DNA of 64,000 nt, taken from the IMG/VR virus record IMGVR_UViG_3300042516_005475, positions 1 to 64,000 of that record; one strand, 5' to 3'. Below the pieces are notes generated by a model. It was not told where the DNA came from. It did no database searches and saw only the letters and a list, made by a program, of their open reading frames with translations. Below are positions 6,077-60,348 of this stretch, in pieces. How positions within the stretch are numbered: position 1 is the stretch's first letter; each line of letters begins with the position of its first letter. Made by a program: the position numbers and the translations under genes.

Positions 6077-6117
6077 AAAATTATTTATTGTTTAGAACAT
6101 GTATTTCAATTTTATTA

Positions 6118-16937: not shown

Positions 16938-17516
16938 TTAGTTTATTTTTTTTAAAAACGTATATAAACTCTCCCAATTATAAACTCTATCCCCTGTCCA
17001 GTTTTTATTGTATGGGTGATCCATAATTATACTTCGCAACCCAACTTGTTTACCGCTTTCTGCATGAGAAACACTATCCTCTAACCAAAAATAATTTTTA
17101 TCCTTGTACTGAACTTTAAGAAAATCTAATTTACTTTTTTTAAAATCTAAACTACAATTAATATAGTCAAACACATCTCCAAATAGGTGTTTTAAATTGT
17201 TTACTCTTAACCTTTGAGCGTATTTGTCAATATGTAAACAACTGATAACTTCAAACCTCCAACCATCTTCTGCTAATTTTTTTACAAATTCTTGAGCATC
17301 TCGGAAAGGCGGAAGAAAACCAACTGCTCCACTTTCATTAAACCTTGATATACAATCTAAGGCTACCTCTTCAGGTAGCCCATATCTAGCACCTTGATAA
17401 AAAATGTGGTCGGTGTTAGGTAATCTTTCATAGCCTCGCTCACTCATCCATACATCGAAAGCAAAAGACCAGTCAAGTAAAACACCGTCACAATCAGTGA
17501 TTAATTTCTTATGCAT
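16938..17516 (-). CDS. HAD-family 5'(3')-deoxyribonucleotidase-like phosphatase
   Basis: TDCDGVL (DxDG), WLEDS, HPYN. Confidence 0.8.
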   Translation of the reverse strand: MHKKLITDCDGVLLDWSFAFDVWMSERGYERLPNTDHIFYQGARYGLPEEVALDCISRFNESGAVGFLPPFRDAQEFVKKLAEDGWRFEVISCLHIDKYAQRLRVNNLKHLFGDVFDYINCSLDFKKSKLDFLKVQYKDKNYFWLEDSVSHAESGKQVGLRSIIMDHPYNKNWTGDRVYNWESLYTFLKKIN

Positions 17517-18234
17517 TTTTTATATACTTGTTTAATTCTTGCCAAGTACCTAAATCAATATAATCCTCTACTTCGATCCCCTTACTTAAATACAAAGGGG
17601 TACTTTTTATCTCGTTTAAAAGTACCCGCTGCTTCAAGGTACTTTTTTCCATAAATGTTATGCTTTGATCGAATGCTCTTTTTCTAAACGCAAAACTACA
17701 CCAAAAAGCATTAAATCTCTCTAATTTTTCTTGCGGCTTATCTTCATATAGTTCTATTATATTGTTTTCATTAATATAAAGGGAACCTTTTGTTTTAAGC
17801 ATAGCAGGGTTCTGTTCTCTTTTATAAAAAAAAGAGAATCCGGTTTCTGTAAGACTATTTTCTACAGATGTAAATAAATCCACCCCTAAACCTAGTTTCA
17901 TTAATGTGTCGGGTAGTAATATAACATTGTGTTCTCCAAACAAATGTTTTGCGCTTTTTATAGCACCTGTATATTCTTGCTCATTAGGGTTTTGAAAAGT
18001 AAAACTAATATCAAACCTATCTTTATACTTGGAAAGATAATTTACAACATCTAGTTTATTTTCGTTTATAACTATAACAAACTCTACATCTTTTCTACCG
18101 TAATCTCTAAAAAAATTAAACGAAAAATCAATTAGAGAAGAATCTTCATCGACTCTAAGGATTTCTTTTGAATATGGTAATTTTAACCTACTACCCTTAC
18201 CAGCTGCAGGTATAATTACAGTTAGTTTGCTCAT
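17509..18234 (-). CDS. Sugar-phosphate nucleotidyltransferase (NTP_transferase)
   Basis: IIPAAGKGSRL...SKE, LLPD, YEDKP, YIDLGTW. Confidence 0.85.
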   Translation of the reverse strand: MSKLTVIIPAAGKGSRLKLPYSKEILRVDEDSSLIDFSFNFFRDYGRKDVEFVIVINENKLDVVNYLSKYKDRFDISFTFQNPNEQEYTGAIKSAKHLFGEHNVILLPDTLMKLGLGVDLFTSVENSLTETGFSFFYKREQNPAMLKTKGSLYINENNIIELYEDKPQEKLERFNAFWCSFAFRKRAFDQSITFMEKSTLKQRVLLNEIKSTPLYLSKGIEVEDYIDLGTWQELNKYIKNA

Positions 18235-18242
18235 ATGTCTCT

Positions 18243-18959
18243 TTATTTATTTTTTTCAGGTTTCTTTTGCTCAGGTCTTGCCAAGGCTTCTAAGGCCTCA
18301 ATATCTTCCATGCCGAGATTTGGATCGTTAAAGATATTAGCATTAGGGTCCATTGAGTCTCCATCCGCATCAAGATAGAGCTTCATGATCTGAATACGTT
18401 CATTACGCTCACCGTATGTTTCAATAATAGGTGGTCGATCATCAGCATGAAAATAATTAGATTTTGGATTATCTCTATTTTCCATTGCAAACACCTTAAA
18501 GAGATTATCAATCTCAACTCGCATAAAAGGGTTAGCATCTCTCATACCATCTTCTTGAATATCAGGAGTCTTGGCTGCTCTTGTAATTGGGATATAGAAA
18601 ATAATATCAATATGTTTTAGAGCATCACGAACAACTGGGATACACTTCTTAATAAAGTCAAAATCAATATCTCCAACGTTGTGATGATAGGCCCACATAG
18701 AATACACGAGATTATCTAGCGGACAACGATCAAATACAATTCTATCACTTTTGCGAGTACCTTCTAGTTGCTTGACCATAAAGTCAAGAATAGCCTGTTG
18801 GGATTCTTTAGTAGTTTTTGAGCTATGGGTTAAACCTTTTTCAACTAAAACATCTCTATATGTCTTTTCTGGAGATTTATAGTTAGTCCACTCAGCAAGA
18901 AAATCTTTAATCAGAGTAGATTTGCCCATGCACTGGGCACCGGAAATGGCAATTCTCAT
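18243..18959 (-). CDS. P-loop nucleotide kinase (AAA_28/dNMP-kinase-like)
   Basis: ISGAQCMGKST, FDRCPLDNLVY, EDGMR. Confidence 0.75.
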   Translation of the reverse strand: MRIAISGAQCMGKSTLIKDFLAEWTNYKSPEKTYRDVLVEKGLTHSSKTTKESQQAILDFMVKQLEGTRKSDRIVFDRCPLDNLVYSMWAYHHNVGDIDFDFIKKCIPVVRDALKHIDIIFYIPITRAAKTPDIQEDGMRDANPFMRVEIDNLFKVFAMENRDNPKSNYFHADDRPPIIETYGERNERIQIMKLYLDADGDSMDPNANIFNDPNLGMEDIEALEALARPEQKKPEKNK

Positions 18960-18994
18960 GATACTATTATATAGTTCATGTATTGATAAATCTA

Positions 18995-19279
18995 CTAAAA
19001 GTTAAACATTGGTGACTCTCCCTGAAAGAACTTAACAGACCCAACATTCAATAGAGATTTAATCTTTTGTTTATCTTCCTGTGTAAGAAGTGTAAACATA
19101 TTTCTATATGTCTCGTCTGCTATATTAATGTTCTTTCGCTTGCACATACCACAGCTAGTCTTTCTAGCAGTACTAACAACACCCATGAAGCTTTGTATCT
19201 TAGTGCTTGTAAAGTGAGTATTGTTTGTATTAAGAAAATCGTAAAACTCGTTGAAGTTTTTAAAAATATGTTCGCTCAT
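18995..19279 (-). CDS. Hypothetical protein (CxxC)
   Basis: ORF with SCGMC; overlaps the upstream gene by ATGA. Confidence 0.55.
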   Translation of the reverse strand: MSEHIFKNFNEFYDFLNTNNTHFTSTKIQSFMGVVSTARKTSCGMCKRKNINIADETYRNMFTLLTQEDKQKIKSLLNVGSVKFFQGESPMFNF

Positions 19280-19623
19280 AGTTCTAGCTTTTTAATTAAT
19301 AAGTATGAAATATAGATACCATACCAATACAATGATACATAAAAAAAGTCTGGAATAATATTTATACTGAACAATAATACTGAAGACCAAAAAGAAATAC
19401 AAAACGGGCAAGCCAGCAGACTGGTAATAACATTTTTATATTCTGTTTCTAAAAACAAAGGGAAGTCAATGTTGTTTAAATTTCTTCGCCATCTCCTCAC
19501 AAGGCCTACTTGATCCATTGATACAAAAGAAAGAACATCTGGAATAAGACTAGTGTCCTTCCAGATGTAAATTAACAACGAAATAAAAATAACTAGACAT
19601 ACGCTTAAATCAAACAAGCTCAT
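19276..19623 (-). CDS. Hypothetical membrane protein
   Basis: Hydrophobic segments; CPFCISFW. Confidence 0.6.
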   Translation of the reverse strand: MSLFDLSVCLVIFISLLIYIWKDTSLIPDVLSFVSMDQVGLVRRWRRNLNNIDFPLFLETEYKNVITSLLACPFCISFWSSVLLFSINIIPDFFYVSLYWYGIYISYLLIKKLEL

Positions 19624-19660
19624 ATATCTAGTTATTTATATGTATCAGACTTTCAAGCCC

Positions 19661-20392
19661 TTAAACCTTGAGAGCTTTATTCCACAAGACCAATTGCAAT
19701 CGAGGACTAAAGTTAAAACCATGCTTCTTGCAAACCTCTGCTACCCAAGGAGCAACAGCATTATGCTCATCTCGAGAACCACAGCAAGGCATCAACCAAA
19801 TTTGATCTTCAGTAATACTAAAAGGTTTGATATACTTTTCGATAATCTCTTCAACATCACTATCTTTCTGCACAACAAACTTAAAGTAAGAGTAGATACT
19901 AGCGTGGTAAGCAATAACCTCTGGAACGTATCTCTTCTCTTCTGGATCTCCGTTAGTAGACAACTTAGGAGACACAGTAAAAGTAGCATTTATACTTTCC
20001 CAAAAACTTGAAGGATTAATCGTACAGTTAGTTTCAAAATCAATAACAGGATAGAAATCGAACTTTCTGAAAAAGGCTTCAATAAACTCAATCAAAGCCT
20101 TTTGCTGAATAAGAGGTTCACCACCAGTAATCTTAAGAACATGATTGCCTTTCAACTTATTTAGGTAATCATTATCTTCAAAGATCTTAAAGATCTCTTC
20201 AAAGGTTAGCTTATTCTTCTTAGACCAGCTAACATAGCTATCACAACCAAACGGAGAATCAGGAGACTTAAACCCGATGCAAGTCAAGTTGCACATTGCC
20301 AATCGCATGAAGATGCTTGGCTTACCAACCAAATGACCTTCACCTTCGATAGTTTCAAAGACAAAGTCATCAGAGAGAAATAATGAACTCAT
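19661..20392 (-). CDS. queE: 7-carboxy-7-deazaguanine synthase (radical SAM)
   Basis: FETIEGEG, FMRLAMCNLTC...CDS, ITGGEP, ETN, TVSPK, SPRLQ. Confidence 0.9.
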   Translation of the reverse strand: MSSLFLSDDFVFETIEGEGHLVGKPSIFMRLAMCNLTCIGFKSPDSPFGCDSYVSWSKKNKLTFEEIFKIFEDNDYLNKLKGNHVLKITGGEPLIQQKALIEFIEAFFRKFDFYPVIDFETNCTINPSSFWESINATFTVSPKLSTNGDPEEKRYVPEVIAYHASIYSYFKFVVQKDSDVEEIIEKYIKPFSITEDQIWLMPCCGSRDEHNAVAPWVAEVCKKHGFNFSPRLQLVLWNKALKV

Positions 20393-20422
20393 AATTTAAT
20401 GATATAGGAATCACTCTTAAGT

Positions 20423-21118
20423 TCAAGCCCATTTAGTACCAAAGTCCCAGGTACTAGGACGATTCTTACCACCGACTGGAACCCCTTGCGGAGGAGCATC
20501 AGTCTGCTTAGGGGTAACCCTAACTGGTTTATTTGTGTCATAAGCCAAGGCTTCAGTCTGCTTTTCAGACTTAGCAGGCGGAGCCCAGACAGGTTCAGCA
20601 GTCTTACCCTTCTTGCCTTTGCCTTTAGCAGGCGCAGCCTCAGCTTCATCAGCAACTTCTGCTGTAGATTCTTGAGCAGTTTCAGCAGAATAAATAGCAG
20701 AGTTCTTCTCATGCTCAAACACCTCAACAGAATGAGCTCGAACTCGACCGCTAGTCTTATGCTTCACGTAGCTATCTGCAGCATTAAAGCAATACTTTGC
20801 AAACAACTCAATTCCAACCCCTTCATCCATAACAACGATTGAGGCAGCTCCAGCCTTTTCAAGAGCCTCAAACTCTTTCATAGCAGGGTCATTCTTAGCA
20901 AGAACGAGAGTATGATCAAACTTCTCCTGCAAGAATCCCTTCAATTCGTCAAAGTCTCCGAAGTCAACAACCCAATTGTTGCCGTCAAGAGAATCAGAAG
21001 TAAACGTAAATTTACCAACCAATCGATAACCATGAATGAATCTGCAATGGGACTTTGCATTAGGCTGACGAAATGCAGCACTTCCGAGTTCAATAACCTT
21101 CGTGGAATAATATCTCAT
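20423..21118 (-). CDS. queD: 6-carboxy-tetrahydropterin synthase with a low-complexity C-terminal extension
   Basis: SHCRFIHGY, WVVDFG, FDHT, EHEKNSA; start trimmed to MRYYSTK. Confidence 0.85.
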   Translation of the reverse strand: MRYYSTKVIELGSAAFRQPNAKSHCRFIHGYRLVGKFTFTSDSLDGNNWVVDFGDFDELKGFLQEKFDHTLVLAKNDPAMKEFEALEKAGAASIVVMDEGVGIELFAKYCFNAADSYVKHKTSGRVRAHSVEVFEHEKNSAIYSAETAQESTAEVADEAEAAPAKGKGKKGKTAEPVWAPPAKSEKQTEALAYDTNKPVRVTPKQTDAPPQGVPVGGKNRPSTWDFGTKWA

Positions 21119-21157
21119 ACTCAGATATGTTATGAACATTTTTCCTAGAATCAAGCC

Positions 21158-21185
21158 TTGACTTGAACGAATTTGTCTCTATAAT
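21158..21185 (+). promoter_or_regulatory. Sigma70-type promoter of folE
   Basis: TTGACT-N16-TATAAT, with ATG 6 nt downstream. Confidence 0.7.
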
Positions 21186-21191
21186 AGGCGT

Positions 21192-21848
21192 ATGAATGAT
21201 GAGATTAGAGAGAAAGATTACCTCCTCCCGACTGCTAACAGTTCTATGGCTTTGACAGAAGAGCAAAAGCTTGCTATTATCGACAAGGGTGCTAAGGCAT
21301 ATGAGACTTTTTTGGATGCTCTTCGCATTGACTGGCGTAATGATCCGAATAGCGCAGGTACTCCTCGACGTGTTGCAAAGTCGTACGTGTTTGATTTAAT
21401 CTCTGGGTGCTATGAGGCTCCGCCGAAGATTACTTCTTTTCCTGCTGATGGTTATGATGGCATCGTCTCTCAGACGAATATTCCGTTGACTAGTATGTGT
21501 AGCCATCACCATTTGGCCTTTACTGGATTGGTGCATGTTGCTTATATTCCTAGTCTTGAAGGTCGTGTTATTGGCTTGAGTAAGCTCAATCGTATTGTTG
21601 AGTTTTATGGTCGTCGACCTCAGATTCAAGAAGGTTTGACGATGCAGATTCATAAGGCTATTAACGAGGTCTGCGAGCATAACAAGGGTGTTGCAGTTGT
21701 TGTTAAGGCTCAGCATACTTGTGCTTGTAATCGAGGTGTGAGACATCAAGGTTGTTATATGGTTACATCTAAGCTGTCTGGAGACTTCTATGATGACGAG
21801 AAGACTCGCAAGGAGTTTTACGACTTTATTAAAATGGCTGAAGAGTAG
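21192..21848 (+). CDS. folE: GTP cyclohydrolase I
   Basis: TPRRVAK, SMCSHH, GLSKLNRIV, RPQIQE, HTCACNRGV. Confidence 0.95.
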   Translation: MNDEIREKDYLLPTANSSMALTEEQKLAIIDKGAKAYETFLDALRIDWRNDPNSAGTPRRVAKSYVFDLISGCYEAPPKITSFPADGYDGIVSQTNIPLTSMCSHHHLAFTGLVHVAYIPSLEGRVIGLSKLNRIVEFYGRRPQIQEGLTMQIHKAINEVCEHNKGVAVVVKAQHTCACNRGVRHQGCYMVTSKLSGDFYDDEKTRKEFYDFIKMAEE

Positions 21849-21880
21849 TCTTTCTACCTGGCTGCAGTAAATAATACTGT

Positions 21881-22417
21881 ATGTCAGGCGCATTTGAACA
21901 TAAAATTTTAACTGTTAGTCAGTCAAAGCAAGCCGGTCTTCTTGGCCCAGCGAAAATCGCTGCTAGTAAACCCGATACAGGTGTTACTATAGTCAAGAAG
22001 TCGGCTTATTTTGTTATTAGGGATTGTGCAAAAATTACTGAAAAGTATCTCGTACACCATGTTTGGGGTGAAATTAAAAACCCCATTGATAGGCTCGAAG
22101 GAGCATTTACCAGAGCTGAAATTGAAGATTTCTTATCTAGAGCCAAAAGAGATACTGAAACACAGCAATTGTGTTCTGTAATTCTAGAAGACATTCATAA
22201 GAAGAATAAGCTTGAAAATACAGGCATTGTATCTCCTGTAGCTGATGCTCCGGTAGTTAAATTTGACTTTACCGAATTTGAGAATGATAAGATTTATGGT
22301 GATTATGATACTGGCGCTCCACAAGCAGACGTTGTAGAAATTCCAACTGGGGTGTTACCAGAAAAAGAAAAGTCAACTTATGAGCTATTTCTTGAAGCCT
22401 TTAAACCTAAGTTATAA
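21881..22417 (+). CDS. Hypothetical late protein upstream of the tubulin gene
   Basis: ORF preceded by TAAATA. Confidence 0.6.
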   Translation: MSGAFEHKILTVSQSKQAGLLGPAKIAASKPDTGVTIVKKSAYFVIRDCAKITEKYLVHHVWGEIKNPIDRLEGAFTRAEIEDFLSRAKRDTETQQLCSVILEDIHKKNKLENTGIVSPVADAPVVKFDFTEFENDKIYGDYDTGAPQADVVEIPTGVLPEKEKSTYELFLEAFKPKL

Positions 22418-22425
22418 ATAAAATT

Positions 22426-23532
22426 ATGAGTGATGATACATCTTTCGATATGGAGTTGCCAGACATTCCAATGCCTGGTCAAGAAATTAATACCGACATT
22501 GAAGACAAGATACAAGTAGGGTTTAAGTTTAGCTTTGTTGGAGCTGGTCAAGGTGGTTCAAGAATCGCTGAAACCTTTCACAAGCTTGGCTACAAGAGAA
22601 CCTGTGTGCTTAATACCGCTCAGCAAGACTTGGCAACAATTGAAGTTCCAAACAAGCTTAAGATTGGTACTGATTCTGGAGCAGGTAAGAATAGAGAAGT
22701 TGCTAAACAGGCTTTAATTGAACAGAGAGAAGATGTTCTTGATCTATTCAGAAAGTCTTTTGCTGGTAACTTTGATCGTATTTTTGTTTGCGCTGGTGCT
22801 GGTGGTGGTACTGGTTCTGGAACAACAACTGAGCTAATTAAGATTGCTAAAGACTACCAAGATTCAATTAAATCTACTTCTGAAAAGGTTGGTGTATTTT
22901 TAGCCTTGCCAAAGAACACTGAAGGTAAGAAGTGTGCTGAGAACGCTCTTAAGACTTTAACTGAGGTTCTTGAGCTCGTAGATCAAGGAATTGTTTCTCC
23001 ATTGGTTATTATTGATAATGAGAAGATTAATACAATCTATCCAAGATTGTCTATTAATCAGTTCTGGAATACTTCTAACAACAGCATCTGTTCTCTATTC
23101 AATCTATTCAATAACATTATTACAAAGAACAGTAGCTATACTTCTTTTGATAATAAGGATTATAAGACAGTGCTTGATAGTGGTATTATTGTATTCGGTG
23201 CAACCCAAGTTACTCAATGGTCTGACGGTACTGAGATTTCTAAAGCTATGAGAGATAACCTCAAGAAGAATATCTTGTCTGGTGGCATTGATCTCGGTAC
23301 TGGTAACATTGCTGCTGCAGTTGTTGTTGGAGATTCAAATGCTCTTGACAATATTCCACAAGAGTATCTTGATCAGGCTTTTGAGCAGCTTACCCGTACA
23401 TTGAAAAACAACTCAACTGTACACCAAGGTATCTATAAAGGTAACAAGGCTGGCTTGAGTATCTTTACTGCAATCGGTGGTTTAGGTAAACCAACCGCTA
23501 AAATAGAAGAGCTTAAGAAGTTATCTACTTAG
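22426..23532 (+). CDS. Tubulin/FtsZ-superfamily GTPase (TubZ/PhuZ/CetZ-like)
   Basis: VGAGQGGSRI (T1), GAGKN (T3), GAGGGTGSG signature, IIDNEK, FDNKD (T7-like). Confidence 0.9.
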   Translation: MSDDTSFDMELPDIPMPGQEINTDIEDKIQVGFKFSFVGAGQGGSRIAETFHKLGYKRTCVLNTAQQDLATIEVPNKLKIGTDSGAGKNREVAKQALIEQREDVLDLFRKSFAGNFDRIFVCAGAGGGTGSGTTTELIKIAKDYQDSIKSTSEKVGVFLALPKNTEGKKCAENALKTLTEVLELVDQGIVSPLVIIDNEKINTIYPRLSINQFWNTSNNSICSLFNLFNNIITKNSSYTSFDNKDYKTVLDSGIIVFGATQVTQWSDGTEISKAMRDNLKKNILSGGIDLGTGNIAAAVVVGDSNALDNIPQEYLDQAFEQLTRTLKNNSTVHQGIYKGNKAGLSIFTAIGGLGKPTAKIEELKKLST

Positions 23533-24151
23533 CCTTGTTGAGGATGTCGAATAAAGTTTTGGCATCCTCTTCACTTGTACCAGGTGGCAATGCAGCTTTA
23601 AAAGCATAATAATCACCAGCTTTAGCAAGGGCTCTTACTTTAGAGCCCTTTACTGTTTTTACATCATTAGGATCTATTTTACCCGACATTGCTCTTTCAC
23701 CACCTAGAGAAACAACACCAACCTTAGTTCCATCTCTCATTGGAGTCTTAAATGTTTCTTCGTTATCAGCTTTACGATCACTACCGCTAATTATGCTTAC
23801 AATAGGGTATTTTAAAACGTTGTGTAAGTAACCTGCAGCATGTTGAGGGGTAGTAATTCTATCATTTTCAACAACGTTAATATCTGCGTAGTTTGGATTG
23901 GTTTTAAATACAGATAGCCTTGCTTTGTATGGAACAGGGTTCTTATCTCCCTTTTCACTTGGAGATAAGAATACATAGAAGTCTGCGTTATTTTTATCTG
24001 CGTATTCTTTAGCGAGTTTAATTAGGTAGTCATGACCAGCTGTTGGAGGATGCATTCTTCCAAATATAAAGTATGCAGCATCTTTCTTCTGCTTAGAGTT
24101 TAAGTCTGCATGAGTTACAACTGCCTCGTATATCTCATTAAAGGTTTTCAT
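23525..24151 (-). CDS. Cytidylyltransferase-like (HxGH-type) nucleotidyltransferase
   Basis: FIFGRMHPPTAGH, KNP, GSDR, GSKVRA; family familiar from T4-like phages. Confidence 0.75.
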   Translation of the reverse strand: MKTFNEIYEAVVTHADLNSKQKKDAAYFIFGRMHPPTAGHDYLIKLAKEYADKNNADFYVFLSPSEKGDKNPVPYKARLSVFKTNPNYADINVVENDRITTPQHAAGYLHNVLKYPIVSIISGSDRKADNEETFKTPMRDGTKVGVVSLGGERAMSGKIDPNDVKTVKGSKVRALAKAGDYYAFKAALPPGTSEEDAKTLFDILNKAK

Positions 24152-24591
24152 TATTCGTCTCTAGTTTCAGCTGTATCTGTTTCAGATGGAATTTCAAGAA
24201 GACCAGCATCATCAATAACCTTCTTTAATACACCTAACATTTCTTCAGCGTTCTTGGCCGTTACTTTCTTAGTGAGTAAATTGGTTTGAAATCCACTAAG
24301 ATCAACTGTATTAGGATCTAACCAGAAGGCTTTTTTTATCAGGTTAATGAGATAGATTACACCTTCTGGGGTTGGTGTTTTATCTTCTTCCTCTTCTGGC
24401 TCGTCATCAATAGGAGTAGTTGCGTCTTGTGGCATTGGCATATCACCTGTTGCCAATGACTGTGGTCCTTCAGGAGCATCTCCAATTTGAGGAGAAGAAG
24501 GAATTGCGACACCACCTTCACCCTGTTCATTAATTTGAAGAAGGTATTTTACAACGGTAGCGTCAAAGGATGATATATTAGGCTTGGGCAT
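24151..24591 (-). CDS. Hypothetical acidic protein
   Basis: ORF coupled to neighbouring genes. Confidence 0.6.
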   Translation of the reverse strand: MPKPNISSFDATVVKYLLQINEQGEGGVAIPSSPQIGDAPEGPQSLATGDMPMPQDATTPIDDEPEEEEDKTPTPEGVIYLINLIKKAFWLDPNTVDLSGFQTNLLTKKVTAKNAEEMLGVLKKVIDDAGLLEIPSETDTAETRDE

Positions 24592-25039
24592 AGCTTACTC
24601 TTGGTCTATTTGGATTGTTTAAGGTTTCAACGTTATCGCTTACTACTGTCTTTGAAAGATTGGCTTCTTTATCTACATCCGGATTTAAGGAATTAACATT
24701 ACCAGTCTTCTTAATCTTACTCATGGTCTTTATCTTAGCAACAATTTCTTGCTCAGGCTGAGTCAAAGGCTTACCTACAGCTAGCTTGTTAATTGTAGTT
24801 CTGATATCACCTTCATTGTCCTGAAGTTGTAATCTTGCAATAGATCTTGGTGTACCAGCTCTAATTTTTGTCTTGTCAATATCTTGTTCTAAATCACCTG
24901 CATCCATCATACCTGGCAATGGTCTAATAGGGCTAGCATTAGGATTAATACCTGTATTGCCTGATTGGCCGAAAGTACCTGCTGACGAATACTCAAGAAG
25001 ACTGTAGTATTTGTTAAGAGTTTCCTCAAATTTACTCAT
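24578..25039 (-). CDS. Hypothetical late protein (N-terminus MSKFEETLNKYYSLLE)
   Basis: TATAAATA 5 nt before ATG 25039. Confidence 0.65.
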   Translation of the reverse strand: MSKFEETLNKYYSLLEYSSAGTFGQSGNTGINPNASPIRPLPGMMDAGDLEQDIDKTKIRAGTPRSIARLQLQDNEGDIRTTINKLAVGKPLTQPEQEIVAKIKTMSKIKKTGNVNSLNPDVDKEANLSKTVVSDNVETLNNPNRPRVSYAQA

Positions 25040-25043
25040 ACTA

Positions 25044-25577
25044 TTATTTATACAATCCATGCTTTACTTTCAGATCGTTAAAGTACTCTTCTGATAAAAA
25101 CGTTAATTTATACTTCTTTGCGAATGTTTTAATACTTCTAAATGAAAAATCTTTTTTGTTCTTTTTATCTATCTGAATCTTTAGCTTTTCTTTTAATTCC
25201 TGCATTTCTCCTGAATTAAACTTATCATCAATACATTCAAATGGAAGTTTATCACAGTAAAAAACAATAGGTAAAGTCTTGTTTAATCTACTAATTAATA
25301 ATTCTACCTCTTTATCTGATAAATTATCTTGAGTGTTAAAATAAAAAACATAAGCAAAATATGTTTTTTCTTTGTTATAGATTTCACAAACTGTCTTAAT
25401 AAAGTTGTGGTAGAAAAACTGTTTGTGGTGGTCTGTGTTTATTGAAAATAATTGACCGTAGTACTCAACAACATCGCTTATCGTCTGTGGTATAATTTCC
25501 TCTTCTAATAAGAATTTTAAATCTATTAACGAAATCGTGTTAAGATTAAGCTTCTTTATATATTTTTTCTTCTCCAC
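25044..25577 (-). CDS. Hypothetical protein
   Basis: 177-aa ORF. Confidence 0.55.
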   Translation of the reverse strand: MEKKKYIKKLNLNTISLIDLKFLLEEEIIPQTISDVVEYYGQLFSINTDHHKQFFYHNFIKTVCEIYNKEKTYFAYVFYFNTQDNLSDKEVELLISRLNKTLPIVFYCDKLPFECIDDKFNSGEMQELKEKLKIQIDKKNKKDFSFRSIKTFAKKYKLTFLSEEYFNDLKVKHGLYK

Positions 25578-25603
25578 AACGAGATTGTAACGGTGATTTA
25601 TTC

Positions 25604-26014
25604 TTATTCAACTGGTTTCTTAAGAAACTTTTTCAGTCTAATATTTATAATACCGTTGTAACAATTCGGGTCAAAAAGCACTCTGCTCTCCATCTGAAGT
25701 CTTGCTTCTTCGTACGCACAGTCCCACTTAGATTTAGCCAAGAATAGTATTTCTCTCTTGAAGCTTTCTTTTCCATATTTCTGAATATCTTTTAATAACT
25801 CTTCTGACGAGCCCCAGTACTCTTTCCAATCAGAAGATTGCTTTTCATGCCGCTTATTTTTCTTGCCTTTGAGTGGTGGTCTCTTTAGAATCTTCCAGAA
25901 GAACTTTTTACCAATGTAATATTTACCAGTTGGTATATGGGTAATTTTATAGACGAAGCCTACATAGTCGTCTAGGTTAATATCTTCTGCCAAATTTTGC
26001 CAACTTACATCCAC
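25604..26014 (-). CDS. GIY-YIG endonuclease (Seg-like)
   Basis: GFVYKIT...KYYIGKK...YWGSS...FKREIL...E...YNG. Confidence 0.85.
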   Translation of the reverse strand: MDVSWQNLAEDINLDDYVGFVYKITHIPTGKYYIGKKFFWKILKRPPLKGKKNKRHEKQSSDWKEYWGSSEELLKDIQKYGKESFKREILFLAKSKWDCAYEEARLQMESRVLFDPNCYNGIINIRLKKFLKKPVE

Positions 26015-26547
26015 ACTACACCTGTCCCGGTAATATGTCCGATGTGGGAAATATCTTCTTTTTTGTGAATAATATTATTCCAAAAAGCTCTCATTTCATT
26101 ATTAAGATGGATATCATCAAATAATAAAAGCCCTTTATAGTTAATCTTTATAAGCCAATCATAAAAAAGCTTTTCATGTATACCATTATGATCAGTATCA
26201 TACATTATAAATGGAGAATTTTTAATTAAATCCTCTCTTAAAAGAACATCTCCTATTATAAATGTGTAATTACTTGGAAGGGTACAAGTAATACTATTAT
26301 TTAAATCAAAACCAGTTACCTTATTTTCAATATTTTCACTTAATGCGCAACCAGACATACCTTTTAAAACACCAACTTCAACCAATGAGGTTTTATTAAA
26401 TTGGTAACCTAACCAAACAAGTAGCCTATAATGCTCAATTCCAGCTTGCATTGGTATATACTTTGCGTAATCATCTTCCTTTGGAATTCTATTAAGAACA
26501 CCAGACATGTCAATACTATCAAGATCTTCTTTGGATGGCCAATTCAT
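26005..26547 (-). CDS. Class I SAM-dependent methyltransferase-like protein
   Basis: VEVGVLKGMSG, YDTDH, GLLLFDDI, TGTGVV. Confidence 0.65.
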   Translation of the reverse strand: MNWPSKEDLDSIDMSGVLNRIPKEDDYAKYIPMQAGIEHYRLLVWLGYQFNKTSLVEVGVLKGMSGCALSENIENKVTGFDLNNSITCTLPSNYTFIIGDVLLREDLIKNSPFIMYDTDHNGIHEKLFYDWLIKINYKGLLLFDDIHLNNEMRAFWNNIIHKKEDISHIGHITGTGVVWM

Positions 26548-27227: not shown

Positions 27228-28666
27228 CGGTTTTAACCATTGATGTTGATAACAGACGTAATACTGCTTCTTTAAGTGGAGACTTTAAAGCAGTTAGAGA
27301 ACACTTCTCTATAAAAAATAAGACTGCTGTCTTTGCTCGTAAACGGGGTTTCTTTGCACCGGAAAGAACATATGTTATTACACCAACTGGTAGAATAGAA
27401 CCTCATTTCCATACTGTTCTTCAAAAATACGCTCAACAAAGTGAAGACCCAACTGAAATTGTCTTAACAGAGAGCTTTAAAAAGTTATTCTCACCCAAAT
27501 TAAAGCTAGACTACCTTGATAAGAAATTACGTCTTGATTTACGTGATTATCAAACCGATGTAGTCCAAACTGCTTTAAAATCTGGTTTTGGTATTATCGA
27601 GTTAGCAACCGCGGGTGGCAAGACTCTCATAATGTCTTCTATCCTAGAAAACATTTATCATCAAAACCCAAACTTTAAATGTCTTCTCATTGTGCCTGAT
27701 TTAGGTCTTGTTAATCAATCGTTTAATGACTTTAAAGATTATAACGTTAGCTTTACTTATAGTACTTGGACAGGTAGTTCTGAGTTGGATTTAAGTACAA
27801 ATGTAATTATTGCTAATATGGGTATCTTACAATCTGAGATATCCGATACTGAATGGACGGAAAGCGTTGATCTTCTCATTGTTGACGAGGTTCACAAAGT
27901 TCGTAGAGGCAATAAGATCAACGACATTATTAAAAAGATCTATACTATTCATAAGTTTGGCTTTACTGGTACCTTGCCTGAAGAGGTATTAGATCAATGG
28001 AATATTTTTGCTAAGTTTGGAGATAGAATTTATTCCAAGATGTCTCACGAGCTAAAGTCTGAGAGTTATGTTACTCCAGCCAAGGTAACTGCTCTTGTTA
28101 TTAATTATAAAACTGGCCCTCAATTTGAAAGAACTAAAGACAGCACACCAGCTGATGAGTATATTGCTGAGCTGAAGTTCTTGCTAACAAACGATTTTCG
28201 TAATGGGGTTATCAATCACCTAGTTAACAAGTTTGACAATAACTCTCTTGTTCTTGTGGACTTAATTGACCACGGTCAAGCCATTTATGATAAAATTACT
28301 ACAAGCTCTACTACTAAAGAGGTTTATTTCATCAGAGGTGAAGTAGAAGTAGAAGAACGTAAGAGAGTTCAGACCTTAATGGAGAAGCAAACTAACGTTT
28401 GTGTAATTGCTATCTCTAAAATATTTTCGACAGGTATTAATATCAAAAATCTTCACTATTTAATCTTTGCTGGAGGTGGAAAAGCGAAGGTAAAGATAGT
28501 ACAATCAATAGGTCGTGGATTACGATTACACGAAGATAAGAAAGAGCTTATCATTATTGACATTGCTGATAACCTAAAGTATGGCATGCAGCACTATCAA
28601 AAAAGAAAGCAGCTTTACAATCAAGAGAAAATACCACATACCTTTACTAACTGCCATGAAAAATAA
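27224..28666 (+). CDS. uvsW: SF2 DNA helicase, UvsW-like
   Basis: LRDYQ, ATAGGKT, DEVH, GFTGT, STGINI, QSIGRGLR. Confidence 0.92.
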   Translation: MTVLTIDVDNRRNTASLSGDFKAVREHFSIKNKTAVFARKRGFFAPERTYVITPTGRIEPHFHTVLQKYAQQSEDPTEIVLTESFKKLFSPKLKLDYLDKKLRLDLRDYQTDVVQTALKSGFGIIELATAGGKTLIMSSILENIYHQNPNFKCLLIVPDLGLVNQSFNDFKDYNVSFTYSTWTGSSELDLSTNVIIANMGILQSEISDTEWTESVDLLIVDEVHKVRRGNKINDIIKKIYTIHKFGFTGTLPEEVLDQWNIFAKFGDRIYSKMSHELKSESYVTPAKVTALVINYKTGPQFERTKDSTPADEYIAELKFLLTNDFRNGVINHLVNKFDNNSLVLVDLIDHGQAIYDKITTSSTTKEVYFIRGEVEVEERKRVQTLMEKQTNVCVIAISKIFSTGINIKNLHYLIFAGGGKAKVKIVQSIGRGLRLHEDKKELIIIDIADNLKYGMQHYQKRKQLYNQEKIPHTFTNCHEK

Positions 28667-29162
28667 TTTACCAAAAATTAAGAAACCTGAAACCTTTGTG
28701 ATGGATCCAACATCCAAGCCACCCAAAGAACAATTTTACGTTGATCCTAAAGAGTTTTATAGGCAGATAAAAGACTATTATAAGAGCGGAGAAATAAACG
28801 ATTATTTGGCAGAATCTATCTATAAGATTGCAAAAGGTCTTTCTTACGCACCTAATTTTATTAATTATTCTTATCGAGACGACATGGTTGGTGATGCTGT
28901 CGTAAAGATGTATACAGCCCTAAAGAATAAGAAGTTTAACGTTAAGACCAAGGATAAAAACGGCTACAATTATAACCCGTTTAGTTACTTTACAACCATT
29001 GCATTCCACGCATTTATCACTAGAATTAAGAAAGAAAAGAAAGAGAAAGACACTATAGCCCTTTATCAAGAAGCGCAGTTTAGAGAGGCTATGCAATCCT
29101 TACCTAACGGTGATTGTGTTTATATCGATCCTGACAGGGAAGATAATTATAACGAAGCCTAG
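28656..29162 (+). CDS. gp55: Late transcription sigma factor, gp55-like
   Basis: IAKGLSYAPNFINYSYRDDMVGDA, NPFSYFTTIAFHAFITRIKKEK. Confidence 0.92.
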   Translation: MKNNLPKIKKPETFVMDPTSKPPKEQFYVDPKEFYRQIKDYYKSGEINDYLAESIYKIAKGLSYAPNFINYSYRDDMVGDAVVKMYTALKNKKFNVKTKDKNGYNYNPFSYFTTIAFHAFITRIKKEKKEKDTIALYQEAQFREAMQSLPNGDCVYIDPDREDNYNEA

Positions 29163-60315: not shown

Positions 60316-60348
60316 ATGCAATAATGTCTATAATCTATAAATAATTAC

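What the first reader, a model, noticed from the sequence alone, without database searches (positions are those of the whole stretch)
22413..23532. Tubulin/FtsZ-family GTPase under a late promoter in a T4-like phage
All main tubulin motifs are present, including GGGTGSG, with an acidic N-terminal extension and no FtsZ-type C-terminal tail. A perfect TATAAATA lies 5 nt upstream. Known phage tubulins (PhuZ in nucleus-forming jumbo phages, TubZ in plasmid-like phages) position DNA or move capsids. Late expression in a gp55-type phage suggests capsid trafficking, assembly-site organisation or interference with host division.
Basis: partly seen in the sequence, partly recalled or inferred. Interest (0 to 1): 0.72.

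Follow-up and report, generated by a model that had tools for sequence, protein, structure and literature searches.

The report
TubZ-like tubulin in T4-like lake phage
A freshwater T4-like jumbo phage carries an intact, strongly conserved tubulin gene of the plasmid-TubZ type directly behind a late-promoter box; it belongs to a large, virus-only and unstudied tubulin family that in many other phages sits inside the capsid-assembly genes.

Summary
ORF 22426..23532 (+, 368 aa) is a complete tubulin/FtsZ-superfamily GTPase with GGGTGSG, all nucleotide loops and the catalytic T7 aspartates. TATAAATA lies at 22413-22420, exactly 5 nt before the ATG. The genome (230 kb, lake metagenomes) is a deep-branching T4-like phage with a gp55 homologue.

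The box is not chance. ATAAATA-N5-ATG occurs 33 times in the genome against 1.8 expected, including before portal and tail-tube genes. By T4 geometry this implies leaderless late mRNAs.

The protein is neither a degraded host FtsZ nor a PhuZ. By profile and fold it is closest to plasmid TubZ/RepX, and dN/dS is 0.03-0.10. It belongs to a large virus-only family, with 209 clusters (50% identity) at E<1e-30. I found no paper on this family, and Bacillus phage G holds the only match among GenBank phages.

It differs from TubZ in four ways: no TubR, no centromere repeats, no long C-terminal tail, and a family-specific N-terminal FDxxLPDIPxP motif. An unknown 178-aa protein is its conserved upstream partner.

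In many relatives the gene lies between the portal and capsid genes. The best reading is a late cytomotive filament serving virion assembly or DNA/capsid positioning. That function is inferred, not shown.

The parts
22426..23532 (+). TubZ-like tubulin/FtsZ-superfamily GTPase, 368 aa (end includes the stop codon)
   Evidence: ORF. Pfam PF00091 1.8e-17, PF13809 2.6e-9, PF22453 TubZ-like_C 6.3e-6. AF2 model pLDDT 94.7. VIA Z 37.3 to B. cereus TubZ. dN/dS 0.03-0.10.
22413..22420 (+). TATAAATA, T4-type (gp55) late-promoter box, 5 nt before the ATG. It contains the TAA stop of the upstream ORF.
   Evidence: Sequence. Genome-wide ATAAATA-N5-ATG occurs 33 times vs 1.8 expected. Box and spacing are kept in relatives with dS 0.4-1.6, with the last sense codon always ending in A. 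Its function as a promoter is inferred from T4 (PMC2988020).
22444..22476 (+). Family-specific N-terminal motif FDMELPDIPMP (residues 7-17) within the acidic extension (residues 1-33)
   Evidence: D8, P12, P15 and P17 are at least 90% conserved in A2. A motif of the type hydrophobic-D-hydrophobic-P-D/E-hydrophobic lies about 25 aa before strand 1. A strict pattern found it in 39 of 100 representative family members with an N-terminal extension; looser variants by eye bring this to about half. Model residues 1-27 have no counterpart in any solved homologue.
22540..22557 (+). T1 loop GAGQGG (residues 39-44), phosphate binding
   Evidence: G39, G41 and G44 are at least 90% conserved in 122 sequences.
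22801..22821 (+). Tubulin signature GGGTGSG (residues 126-132, T4 loop)
   Evidence: Sequence. G126-G128, G130 and G132 are conserved or invariant.
23146..23160 (+). T7 loop FDNKD (residues 241-245), the catalytic aspartates that complete the GTPase site of the next subunit in a filament
   Evidence: D242 is invariant in 122 sequences and D245 is invariant in A2. It aligns with FtsZ NVDFAD.
21881..22417 (+). ORF178, conserved upstream partner. It has a helical N-domain (1-113), a disordered acidic linker with invariant IYGDY, and a C-terminal helix. Candidate adaptor.
   Evidence: It lies immediately upstream of the tubulin in all 16 loci of the clade. The same holds in a 49%-identical T4-like lineage (L086) and in a ClpB/QueF-type backbone (L089/L090). 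Alignment; model. No fold or family match.
21192..21848 (+). GTP cyclohydrolase I (FolE), first gene of the three-gene + strand block
   Evidence: Pfam PF01227 7e-48.
21158..21185 (+). sigma70-like promoter TTGACT-16-TATAAT (11/12) before FolE. Possible early transcription reading through to the tubulin.
   Evidence: Consensus scan. The number of such sites in the region is not above chance, so this is a lead only.
28581..29162 (+). gp55-type late sigma factor
   Evidence: 41% identity to T4 gp55 over residues 21-117, E 3.5e-9.

Best explanation
The gene encodes a working, self-assembling TubZ-like tubulin. It binds GTP through the canonical loops. Like its relatives, it should polymerise head to tail, with the T7 aspartates of one subunit activating hydrolysis in the next, giving dynamic (treadmilling) filaments. 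This step is inferred from intact motifs and fold.

It is transcribed by host RNA polymerase carrying the phage's gp55-type sigma, from the TATAAATA box. With T4 geometry (box at -13 to -6) the transcript would start on the A of the ATG, so the late mRNA would be leaderless, as for about 30 other genes of this phage. This step is also inferred.

Acting late, together with the virion genes, the filament most likely organises morphogenesis. It could position or move replicated DNA, proheads or the packaging site. Coupling to cargo would go through the family-specific N-terminal FDxxLPDIPxP peptide and, in this lineage, through the co-transcribed ORF178 as adaptor. These take the place of the C-terminal tail and TubR of plasmid TubZ systems. 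This last step is an inference from gene context only.
For: Identity and integrity:
- Pfam and profile matches.
- AF2 model pLDDT 94.7.
- Best fold matches are B. cereus TubZ/RepX (Z 37.3) and pBtoxis TubZ (36.8), against FtsZ at 31.4 or less. TM-scores agree: 0.79-0.81 vs 0.65-0.69.
- All GTP loops and T7 D242 are conserved in 122 homologues.
- dN/dS is 0.03-0.10.

Late expression:
- A gp55 homologue is present.
- ATAAATA-N5-ATG occurs 33 times vs 1.8 expected. With this 5-nt gap it precedes the portal, tail tube and a virion structural protein. Sheath and TerL carry the box at gaps of 10 and 15 nt.
- The box and its spacing are conserved in relatives despite saturated synonymous change.
- T4 box geometry is taken from PMC2988020.

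Assembly link:
- In about 30 related viral contigs the tubulin lies between TerL/portal and the cement and other virion-structural genes.

Partner:
- ORF178 is adjacent in three different lineages and backbones.

Virus-specific family:
- The nearest Atlas clusters are 87-100% viral.
- The family has 209 clusters (50% identity) at E<1e-30.
Against: - No experiment or transcript map exists. The only RNA-library signal is one 252-nt contig of a relative, and it may be DNA.
- A fixed 5-nt AT-rich element before the ATG could also be a translation-initiation signal in a host that hardly uses Shine-Dalgarno sites (245 of 293 genes have none). It need not be only a promoter.
- A sigma70-like promoter before FolE may give earlier expression.
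- In this genome the gene sits among nucleotide-modification genes, not head genes.
- The complex prediction of two tubulin copies plus ORF178 gave no answer (0.28, under the 0.32 mark).
- ORF178 has no recognisable DNA-binding or other fold.
- No cargo has been identified.
Confidence: 0.5

Rival explanations
1. Interference with host division or cytoskeleton. The phage tubulin, or its N-terminal DIP-containing peptide, poisons or competes with host FtsZ or its partners. This would stop division and enlarge or stabilise the infected cell.
For: It is a superfamily relative of FtsZ, and sources annotate it as 'cell division GTPase FtsZ'. The acidic N-terminal peptide with a D-I-P core loosely recalls the FtsZ C-terminal peptide (own knowledge; a lead only). 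Possible early transcription from the FolE promoter.
Against: Identity to FtsZ is only about 20-25%, and fold and profile scores are lower than to self-contained TubZ/RepX systems. Copolymerisation at that distance is unlikely. The aromatic/leucine half of the FtsZ peptide is not conserved in the motif. Late timing and a head-module position in relatives do not fit a division block. Known phage division inhibitors are small early proteins (own knowledge).
Confidence: 0.12
2. Genome partition in a carrier or pseudolysogenic state. This would be a type III (TubZRC-like) segregation system keeping the 230-kb phage genome as an episome in slowly growing lake bacteria, with ORF178 as an unconventional centromere-binding adaptor.
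For: The closest characterised relatives, RepX/TubZ of Bacillus plasmids and TubZ of Clostridium phage c-st, do exactly this. A small gene lies immediately upstream of the tubulin there as well, as with ORF178 here.
Against: No TubR homologue was found and ORF178 is not a winged helix. There are no iterated centromere-like repeats near the operon. The conserved C-terminal tail that binds TubR is missing. The backbone is that of a T4-like lytic phage. A late-promoter box and a head-module position in relatives fit lytic morphogenesis better.
Confidence: 0.13
3. Positioning of the replication or DNA-modification compartment rather than of capsids. The filament would centre or cluster replicating, 7-deazaguanine-modified phage DNA, like PhuZ without a protein nucleus. 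The link to the neighbouring FolE/QueD/QueE genes would then be functional.
For: It is co-located with FolE/QueD/QueE here. It lies next to QueD in L086 and near QueF in L089/L090, and next to DnaE in the marine clade. PhuZ centres phage DNA (PMC4244570, listed).
Against: The Que neighbourhood is absent from most family contexts. Replication genes in this genome lack the late box. No chimallin is present. This rival overlaps with the best explanation and differs only in the cargo.
Confidence: 0.2

Closest known systems
Plasmid TubZ/RepX of Bacillus (pXO1-type RepX = B. cereus TubZ, PDB 4ei7; pBtoxis TubZ, PDB 2xka): type III partition motors
   Same: Best match by family profile (E 3e-45, full length), by hhalign (99.9%, 318 columns) and by fold (Z 37.3 and 36.8; TM 0.79-0.81). 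It has a TubZ-like C-terminal domain (PF22453), intact GTP loops and T7 loop, and a small gene directly upstream in the same orientation.
   Different: Identity is only 21-24%. The upstream gene is not a TubR winged helix. There are no tubC-like repeats. The roughly 60-aa C-terminal tail is absent, while a conserved N-terminal peptide is present. It is carried by a lytic T4-like phage and preceded by a late-promoter box. The tree does not resolve whether the viral family is sister to, or includes, the plasmid clade.
TubZ of Clostridium phage c-st (TubZRC plus TubY; PDB 3v3t, 4xcq)
   Same: It is a phage-encoded TubZ-type tubulin. Fold Z is 32-32.7 and profile E is 6e-30.
   Different: c-st is a plasmid-like prophage, and its TubZ has a TubR next to it. 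The match is weaker than to the Bacillus plasmid proteins. No partition context is seen here.
PhuZ of nucleus-forming jumbo phages (phiKZ gp39, 201phi2-1 gp59)
   Same: It is a tubulin encoded by a lytic phage of more than 200 kb. PhuZ filaments position phage DNA and carry capsids, which is the kind of role proposed here.
   Different: Similarity is confined to the GTPase domain (hhalign 92.9%, E 3.6e-7, 173 columns). PhuZ is not among the 60 best PDB profile hits or the 50 best fold hits. PHROG PhuZ scores only 6e-4. There is no chimallin. The phage uses host RNA polymerase with gp55. There is no acidic C-terminal tail.
FtsZ and archaeal CetZ
   Same: Same superfamily fold and motifs. CetZ2 scores Z 36.0 and FtsZ up to 31.4.
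   Different: There is no FtsZ_C or CetZ_C Pfam match and no linker plus C-terminal peptide. Profile scores are 12 orders of magnitude weaker than for RepX. The nearest clusters are viral, not cellular.
Bacillus phage G gp138 ('putative FtsZ-like')
   Same: It is the only match among 50,697 GenBank phage records (26% identity, 95% coverage). It also has a small upstream gene.
   Different: It groups with the plasmid TubZ/RepX clade in the tree, lacks the N-terminal extension, and is uncharacterised (PMC12484599).

Membership tests
Tubulin/FtsZ superfamily | Signature GGGTG(S/T)G and nucleotide-binding loops T1-T6 | tested here: met
   GGGTGSG at residues 126-132. G39/G41/G44, G85-A86-K88, P162/E166 and N173 are conserved in 122 homologues. 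PF00091 E 1.8e-17, 64.7 bits against a cut-off of 33.
Tubulin/FtsZ superfamily | T7 loop acidic residues that activate GTP hydrolysis across the longitudinal interface | tested here: met
   FDNKD at 241-245. D242 is invariant and D245 is invariant in the closer set. It aligns to FtsZ NVDFAD.
Tubulin/FtsZ superfamily | Two-domain fold (Rossmann-like GTPase domain, helix H7, C-terminal activation domain) | tested here: met
   AF2 pLDDT 94.7 and pTM 0.91. Z 30-37 over about 300-330 residues to TubZ, CetZ and FtsZ.
Tubulin/FtsZ superfamily | GTP-dependent polymerisation | not testable with these tools
   This needs purified protein. The one complex job contained two copies but scored only the partner and gave no answer.
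TubZ (type III partition tubulins) | Closest sequence and fold relationship, with a TubZ-type C-terminal domain | tested here: met
   RepX is the best profile hit at 3e-45. hhalign 99.9%. Z 37.3 and 36.8. PF22453 scores 26.7 bits against a cut-off of 26, so it only just passes.
TubZ (type III partition tubulins) | Monophyly with characterised TubZ in a tree | tested here: inconclusive
   In the 45-row IQ-TREE, the viral family, the plasmid TubZ/RepX plus phage G clade, c-st TubZ and PhuZ form an unresolved base. There was one FtsZ outgroup only and the branches are long.
TubZ (type III partition tubulins) | TubR winged-helix adaptor encoded upstream | tested here: not met
   No match to pBtoxis TubR in the genome. 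The upstream ORF178 is an all-helical domain with a disordered acidic tail and no fold match.
TubZ (type III partition tubulins) | Centromere (tubC) of iterated repeats next to the operon | tested here: not met
   Only short two-copy chance-level repeats occur in 19000-26500. The flanks are almost entirely coding.
TubZ (type III partition tubulins) | Extended C-terminal tail that binds the adaptor and the next subunit | tested here: not met
   The protein ends at residue 368, where the RepX and TubZ alignments reach chain residues 374-393 of 435-484. C-terminal extensions in a few relatives are not conserved.
PhuZ (Chimalliviridae spindle tubulin) | Co-occurrence with chimallin nuclear-shell protein | tested here: not met
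   No match to phiKZ gp54 at E<=1 in the complete genome. This was a single-sequence search, so a very remote homologue cannot be excluded.
PhuZ (Chimalliviridae spindle tubulin) | Full-length sequence relationship and acidic C-terminal tail | tested here: not met
   hhalign covers only 173 columns of the N-domain, E 3.6e-7. PHROG PhuZ 6e-4. There is no C-terminal tail.
FtsZ (host-derived copy) | FtsZ_C domain, disordered linker and conserved C-terminal peptide; nesting among bacterial FtsZ | tested here: not met
   No PF12327 match. No tail. FtsZ scores are below TubZ and CetZ. The nearest clusters are viral. dN/dS of 0.03-0.10 excludes decay.
T4-type (gp55-dependent) late promoter | TATAAATA box, gp55 in the genome, and enrichment before late (structural) genes | tested here: met
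   Box at 22413-22420. gp55 homologue. 33 ATAAATA-N5-ATG against 1.8 expected. The box lies before portal, TerL, sheath, tail tube and a virion protein.
T4-type (gp55-dependent) late promoter | Late transcription start about 6 nt downstream of the box | not testable with these tools
   No usable RNA reads. One RNA-library run held only a 252-nt contig of a relative.

The most novel reading that the evidence does not exclude
A large, virus-only branch of the TubZ radiation is a dedicated morphogenesis cytoskeleton of non-nucleus-forming tailed phages. It is spread by exchange among T4-like, DnaE/ClpB-type and other aquatic phage backbones. Filaments made late in infection would use a conserved N-terminal FDxxLPDIPxP peptide, instead of the C-terminal tail and TubR of plasmids, to engage proheads, portals or lineage-specific adaptors such as ORF178. 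They would organise capsid assembly and DNA packaging. Capsid trafficking on tubulin tracks would then not be peculiar to Chimalliviridae but common in environmental phages.
Probability: 0.3. Interest if true: 0.82.

Novelty: new variant of a known kind. Interest (0 to 1): 0.7.

Why it matters
Phage tubulins are known from two settings only: PhuZ of nucleus-forming jumbo phages, and TubZ of plasmid-like prophages. The literature held here treats tubulin as a hallmark of Chimalliviridae, with 'a handful' of scattered exceptions (PMC11835377).

This gene belongs to a family with hundreds of sequence clusters in lake and ocean viromes. It has its own conserved N-terminal peptide and no TubR, centromere or nucleus shell. 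It is found in T4-like phages and, in other phages, inside the head-gene block.

If it forms filaments that serve virion assembly, then cytoskeleton-guided morphogenesis is a widespread phage strategy. It would also offer a simple non-nucleus model for how a tubulin is coupled to viral cargo.

The accompanying ATAAATA-N5-ATG signature points to systematic leaderless late mRNAs in a T4-like phage. That is directly testable.

Tried and rejected
1. Degraded host FtsZ copy: rejected on intact motifs, dN/dS of 0.03-0.10, higher TubZ scores and viral nearest clusters.

2. PhuZ or nucleus-forming phage: rejected. There is no chimallin and only N-domain similarity.

3. Canonical TubZRC: there is no TubR, no repeats and no C-terminal tail.

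4. ORF178 as a TubR-like or otherwise recognisable adaptor: Pfam, PHROGs, Foldseek PDB, AFDB clusters and Atlas all gave nothing above noise.

5. Predicted complex of two tubulins plus ORF178: 'no answer', score 0.28 against a mark of 0.32. It is not evidence either way.

6. Transcript evidence: a single RNA-library run holds a 252-nt contig of a relative, with no ends and no direction.

7. ClpB-like chaperone as obligate partner: it is adjacent in the DnaE-type marine clade and present elsewhere in this genome. It is absent from four other tubulin-bearing phage records, which also lack gp55.

8. Functional link to the 7-deazaguanine genes: the neighbourhood is not conserved across the family.

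9. Tree against references: the deep order is unresolved, with long branches and only one FtsZ. No CetZ or archaeal FtsZ sequences were obtainable as loci.

10. The search for related loci with the 122-sequence alignment failed for lack of a conserved block. It was repeated with a closer set.

11. Four literature searches found no description of this family.

12. T4 gp45 was not detected by a single-sequence search. This is not evidence of absence.
Full report
**1. What is there**

The window is the first 64 kb of a 230,047-bp IMG/VR virus record (one contig, CheckV 100% complete, 36% G+C).

ORF 22426..23532 (+) encodes 368 residues. TATAAATA lies at 22413-22420 and five bases separate it from the ATG. 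The TAA stop of the preceding ORF (21881..22417) lies inside the box.

The protein matches three Pfam families: Tubulin (PF00091, 1.8e-17), Tubulin_2 (PF13809, 2.6e-9) and, just above its cut-off, TubZ-like_C (PF22453, 6.3e-6). GGGTGSG is residues 126-132.

In an alignment of 122 homologues the following are invariant or nearly so:
- T1 glycines (G39, G41, G44)
- T3 G85-A86-K88
- T4 G126-G132
- T5 P162/E166
- T6 N173
- T7 D242

The T7 loop FDNKD aligns with FtsZ NVDFAD. That includes the acidic N-terminal extension (9 acidic and 1 basic residue in residues 1-33) and the lack of an FtsZ-type tail.

**2. The phage**

PHROG matches identify a T4-type set of genes:
- portal
- large terminase
- tail sheath and tail tube
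- family-B DNA polymerase
- SbcC-like nuclease
- DnaB-like and other helicases

The portal and polymerase are only 29-33% identical to those of cyanophages, Pelagibacter phage HTVC008M, Caulobacter phage Cr30 and Sinorhizobium phages. No GenBank phage matches at the DNA level. This is therefore a deep, uncultivated T4-like lineage.

A gp55 homologue lies at 28581..29162, 41% identical to T4 gp55 over residues 21-117.

The DNA is found almost word for word in more than twenty lake-water metagenome runs.

**3. The promoter box**

ATAAATA is about 20-fold enriched in the 40 nt upstream of crude gene starts (53 genes against 2.6 expected).

Of 119 ATAAATA sites in the genome, 33 are followed by ATG after exactly 5 nt, against 1.8 expected. 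Genes carrying the box with this 5-nt gap include the portal, tail tube and a virion structural protein. Sheath and TerL carry it at gaps of 10 and 15 nt. Replication genes lack it.

In relatives of the tubulin gene with dS 0.4-1.6, the box and the 5-nt gap are kept. The last sense codon of the upstream ORF always ends in A, even when the amino acid changes.

T4 late promoters are an 8-bp box whose first base is at -13 (PMC2988020; PMC7892883). A 5-nt gap therefore puts +1 on the A of the ATG, giving a leaderless late mRNA. This fits the near absence of Shine-Dalgarno-like motifs (245 of 293 genes have none).

This is inference, for three reasons:
- No usable RNA data exist.
- A fixed AT-rich element could also serve translation.
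- A near-consensus sigma70-type promoter (TTGACT-16-TATAAT, 21158-21185) before FolE could give earlier read-through transcription of the FolE-ORF178-tubulin block.

**4. Which tubulin**

Single-sequence and profile searches of PDB sequences rank B. cereus/pXO1-type RepX (TubZ) first. Profile E-values:

| PDB group | Profile E-value |
|---|---|
| RepX (B. cereus TubZ), full length | 3e-45 |
| Archaeal FtsZ | 3e-33 |
| CetZ | 1e-32 |
| c-st TubZ | 6e-30 |
| pBtoxis TubZ | 1e-24 |

hhalign gives 99.9% (E 4e-32, 318 columns) to RepX. To phiKZ PhuZ it gives only 92.9% (E 3.6e-7, 173 columns of the GTPase domain).

The AF2 model is confident (pLDDT 94.7). Fold comparison gives:

| Structure | Z | TM |
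|---|---|---|
| B. cereus TubZ | 37.3 | 0.79 |
| pBtoxis TubZ | 36.8 | 0.80-0.81 |
| CetZ2 | 36.0 | 0.74 |
| c-st TubZ | 32.7 | not listed |
| FtsZ | 31.4 or less | 0.65-0.69 |

Model residues 1-27 align to nothing in any solved homologue.

A 45-row maximum-likelihood tree puts the query in a well-supported viral subclade. It leaves the deep order unresolved among the viral family, the plasmid TubZ/RepX plus phage G clade, c-st TubZ and PhuZ.

The gene is under strong purifying selection, with dN/dS of 0.03 at dS 0.4-1.1 and 0.10 at dS 1.5. It is single-copy in the genome. It is thus a TubZ-like tubulin, not a decayed FtsZ and not a PhuZ.

**5. The family**

- The word-index search found more than 1,759 relatives.
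- The exhaustive search found 209 clusters (50% identity) at E<1e-30 and 808 at E<1e-10.
- The nearest ESM-Atlas clusters are 87-100% viral.
- Members come from lakes and from Tara ocean samples.
- Among 50,697 GenBank phages, only Bacillus phage G matches (26% identity).
- Among plasmids, the matches are the Bacillus RepX group and a few Alicyclobacillus and Lysinibacillus proteins.
- The papers held here do not describe the family. One states that tubulin distinguishes Chimalliviridae apart from 'a handful' of scattered large phages (PMC11835377).

**6. Family-specific features**

A motif of the form F-D-x-x-(L/M)-P-D-I-P-x-P lies about 25 residues before the first strand. D8, P12, P15 and P17 are at least 90% conserved among the closer relatives. 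Recognisable variants occur in about half of the representative clusters.

The AF2 confidence of this non-helical segment is fairly high (77-88 for residues 11-30). This suggests that it docks on the tubulin body, its own or a neighbour's. I could not inspect coordinates, so this remains a suggestion.

The long C-terminal tail of TubZ and PhuZ is absent.

**7. Context**

In this lineage the order FolE - ORF178 - tubulin is fixed, and ORF178 is always immediately upstream (16 of 16 loci).

ORF178 homologues at 40-50% identity are again directly upstream of a tubulin in two other settings: another T4-like lineage (L086, with UvsY and PhoH) and a quite different ClpB/QueF-type backbone (L089/L090). 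One lineage has the ORF178 homologue without an adjacent tubulin (L087/L088).

ORF178 has a confident helical N-domain (1-113), a disordered acidic stretch with an invariant IYGDY, and a short C-terminal helix. It matches no family or fold.

Plasmid and phage G tubulins also have a small gene directly upstream, so the two-gene layout is shared even though the partner is not.

Other family contexts are:
- A marine DnaE(intein)-ClpB-like-small ORF-tubulin block.
- The largest group: TerL - portal-sized protein - (unknown) - tubulin - unknown - about 500-aa protein - cement protein (PF22758) - about 390-aa protein, followed by tail-fibre-like genes. This places the tubulin inside the head-gene block.

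Four long tubulin-bearing records lack both gp55 and ClpB-like genes. The gene has therefore moved among unrelated phage backbones at 53-63% protein identity.

This genome has no chimallin or TubR homologue and no centromere-like repeats.

**8. Interpretation**

Shown:
- An intact, selected, TubZ-like tubulin.
- A T4-like phage with gp55.
- A statistically strong late-box signature that includes this gene.
- A conserved partner gene.
- A virus-only family with its own N-terminal motif.

Inferred:
- GTP-driven filament formation.
- Late, leaderless expression.

Proposed:
- A role in organising virion morphogenesis or the position of DNA or capsids.
- Cargo coupling through the N-terminal peptide and ORF178.

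The rivals are less well supported (see the rival list). They are a host-division block, episome partition, and positioning of the replication or modification compartment.

The complex prediction gave no answer and counts for nothing.

**9. Verdict**

The protein is a new variant of a known kind: a TubZ-type phage tubulin without TubR, tubC or tail, with a new N-terminal motif and a new partner, in a T4-like lytic phage. Its function is open and experimentally approachable.

Noticed in passing
whole genome; in the window e.g. 6077-6088 (portal), 22413-22425, 60336-60348: ATAAATA-N5-ATG is a genome-wide signature: 33 of 119 ATAAATA sites against 1.8 expected. With the T4 box at -13..-6 this implies leaderless late mRNAs. 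245 of 293 crude genes have no Shine-Dalgarno-like motif.
   Followed up: partly
window 21158-21192: A near-consensus sigma70 promoter (TTGACT-16-TATAAT) ends 6 nt before the FolE ATG, so early or middle mRNAs may be leaderless as well.
   Followed up: no
window 17509-21848: A 7-deazaguanine/queuosine-precursor cluster: QueE-like radical SAM (19661-20392, -), QueD (20423-21154, -) and FolE (21192-21848, +). It is accompanied by an AAA_28/dNK-like kinase (18243-18959) and a nucleotidyl transferase (17509-18234). This suggests modified DNA. DpdA and QueC were not looked for.
   Followed up: no
window 20423-21154 (-): QueD is 243 aa. About 85 residues of Ala/Lys/Glu/Pro-rich low-complexity sequence are appended to the PTPS domain (matched at residues 24-156).
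   Followed up: no
genome 105035-107425 (+), locus L100: A ClpB/ClpC-like two-AAA chaperone (811 aa) in a T4-like phage. Its homologue sits next to the tubulin in the marine DnaE-type phages (L001-L003, L021-L039). It is absent from four other tubulin phages.
   Followed up: partly
window 52979-55741 (+): The large terminase is 920 aa. Terminase profile matches are split into residues 71-329 and 438-851, and there is a weak primase-family match in the first part. This may be an insertion, an intein or a fused domain.
   Followed up: no
genome 94381-104982 (+): A 3,533-aa ORF preceded by ATAAATA with a 6-nt gap. Presumably a giant late or structural protein.
   Followed up: no
window 25604-26014 (-): A 136-aa ORF with a GIY-YIG-like N-terminus (YVGFVYKITH..GKYYIGKK), probably a homing endonuclease. 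A SegE-type GIY-YIG gene also lies near the tubulin in L086.
   Followed up: no
L087:5001-5549, L088:3110-3658: An ORF178 homologue (182 aa) sits next to a ClpB-like gene and QueF, but with no tubulin gene beside it. The partner family can therefore occur without an adjacent tubulin.
   Followed up: partly
L001:1046-5227: The DnaE-type polymerase of the marine tubulin-bearing phages carries an intein with a LAGLIDADG domain.
   Followed up: no
L021-L031, L056: the 12 nt before the tubulin start: In the marine DnaE clade a TATAAT or TATAA element directly abuts the annotated ATG (gap 0-3 nt). This is too close for a promoter of that start. The start may be miscalled, or the AT-rich element may serve translation.
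   Followed up: no
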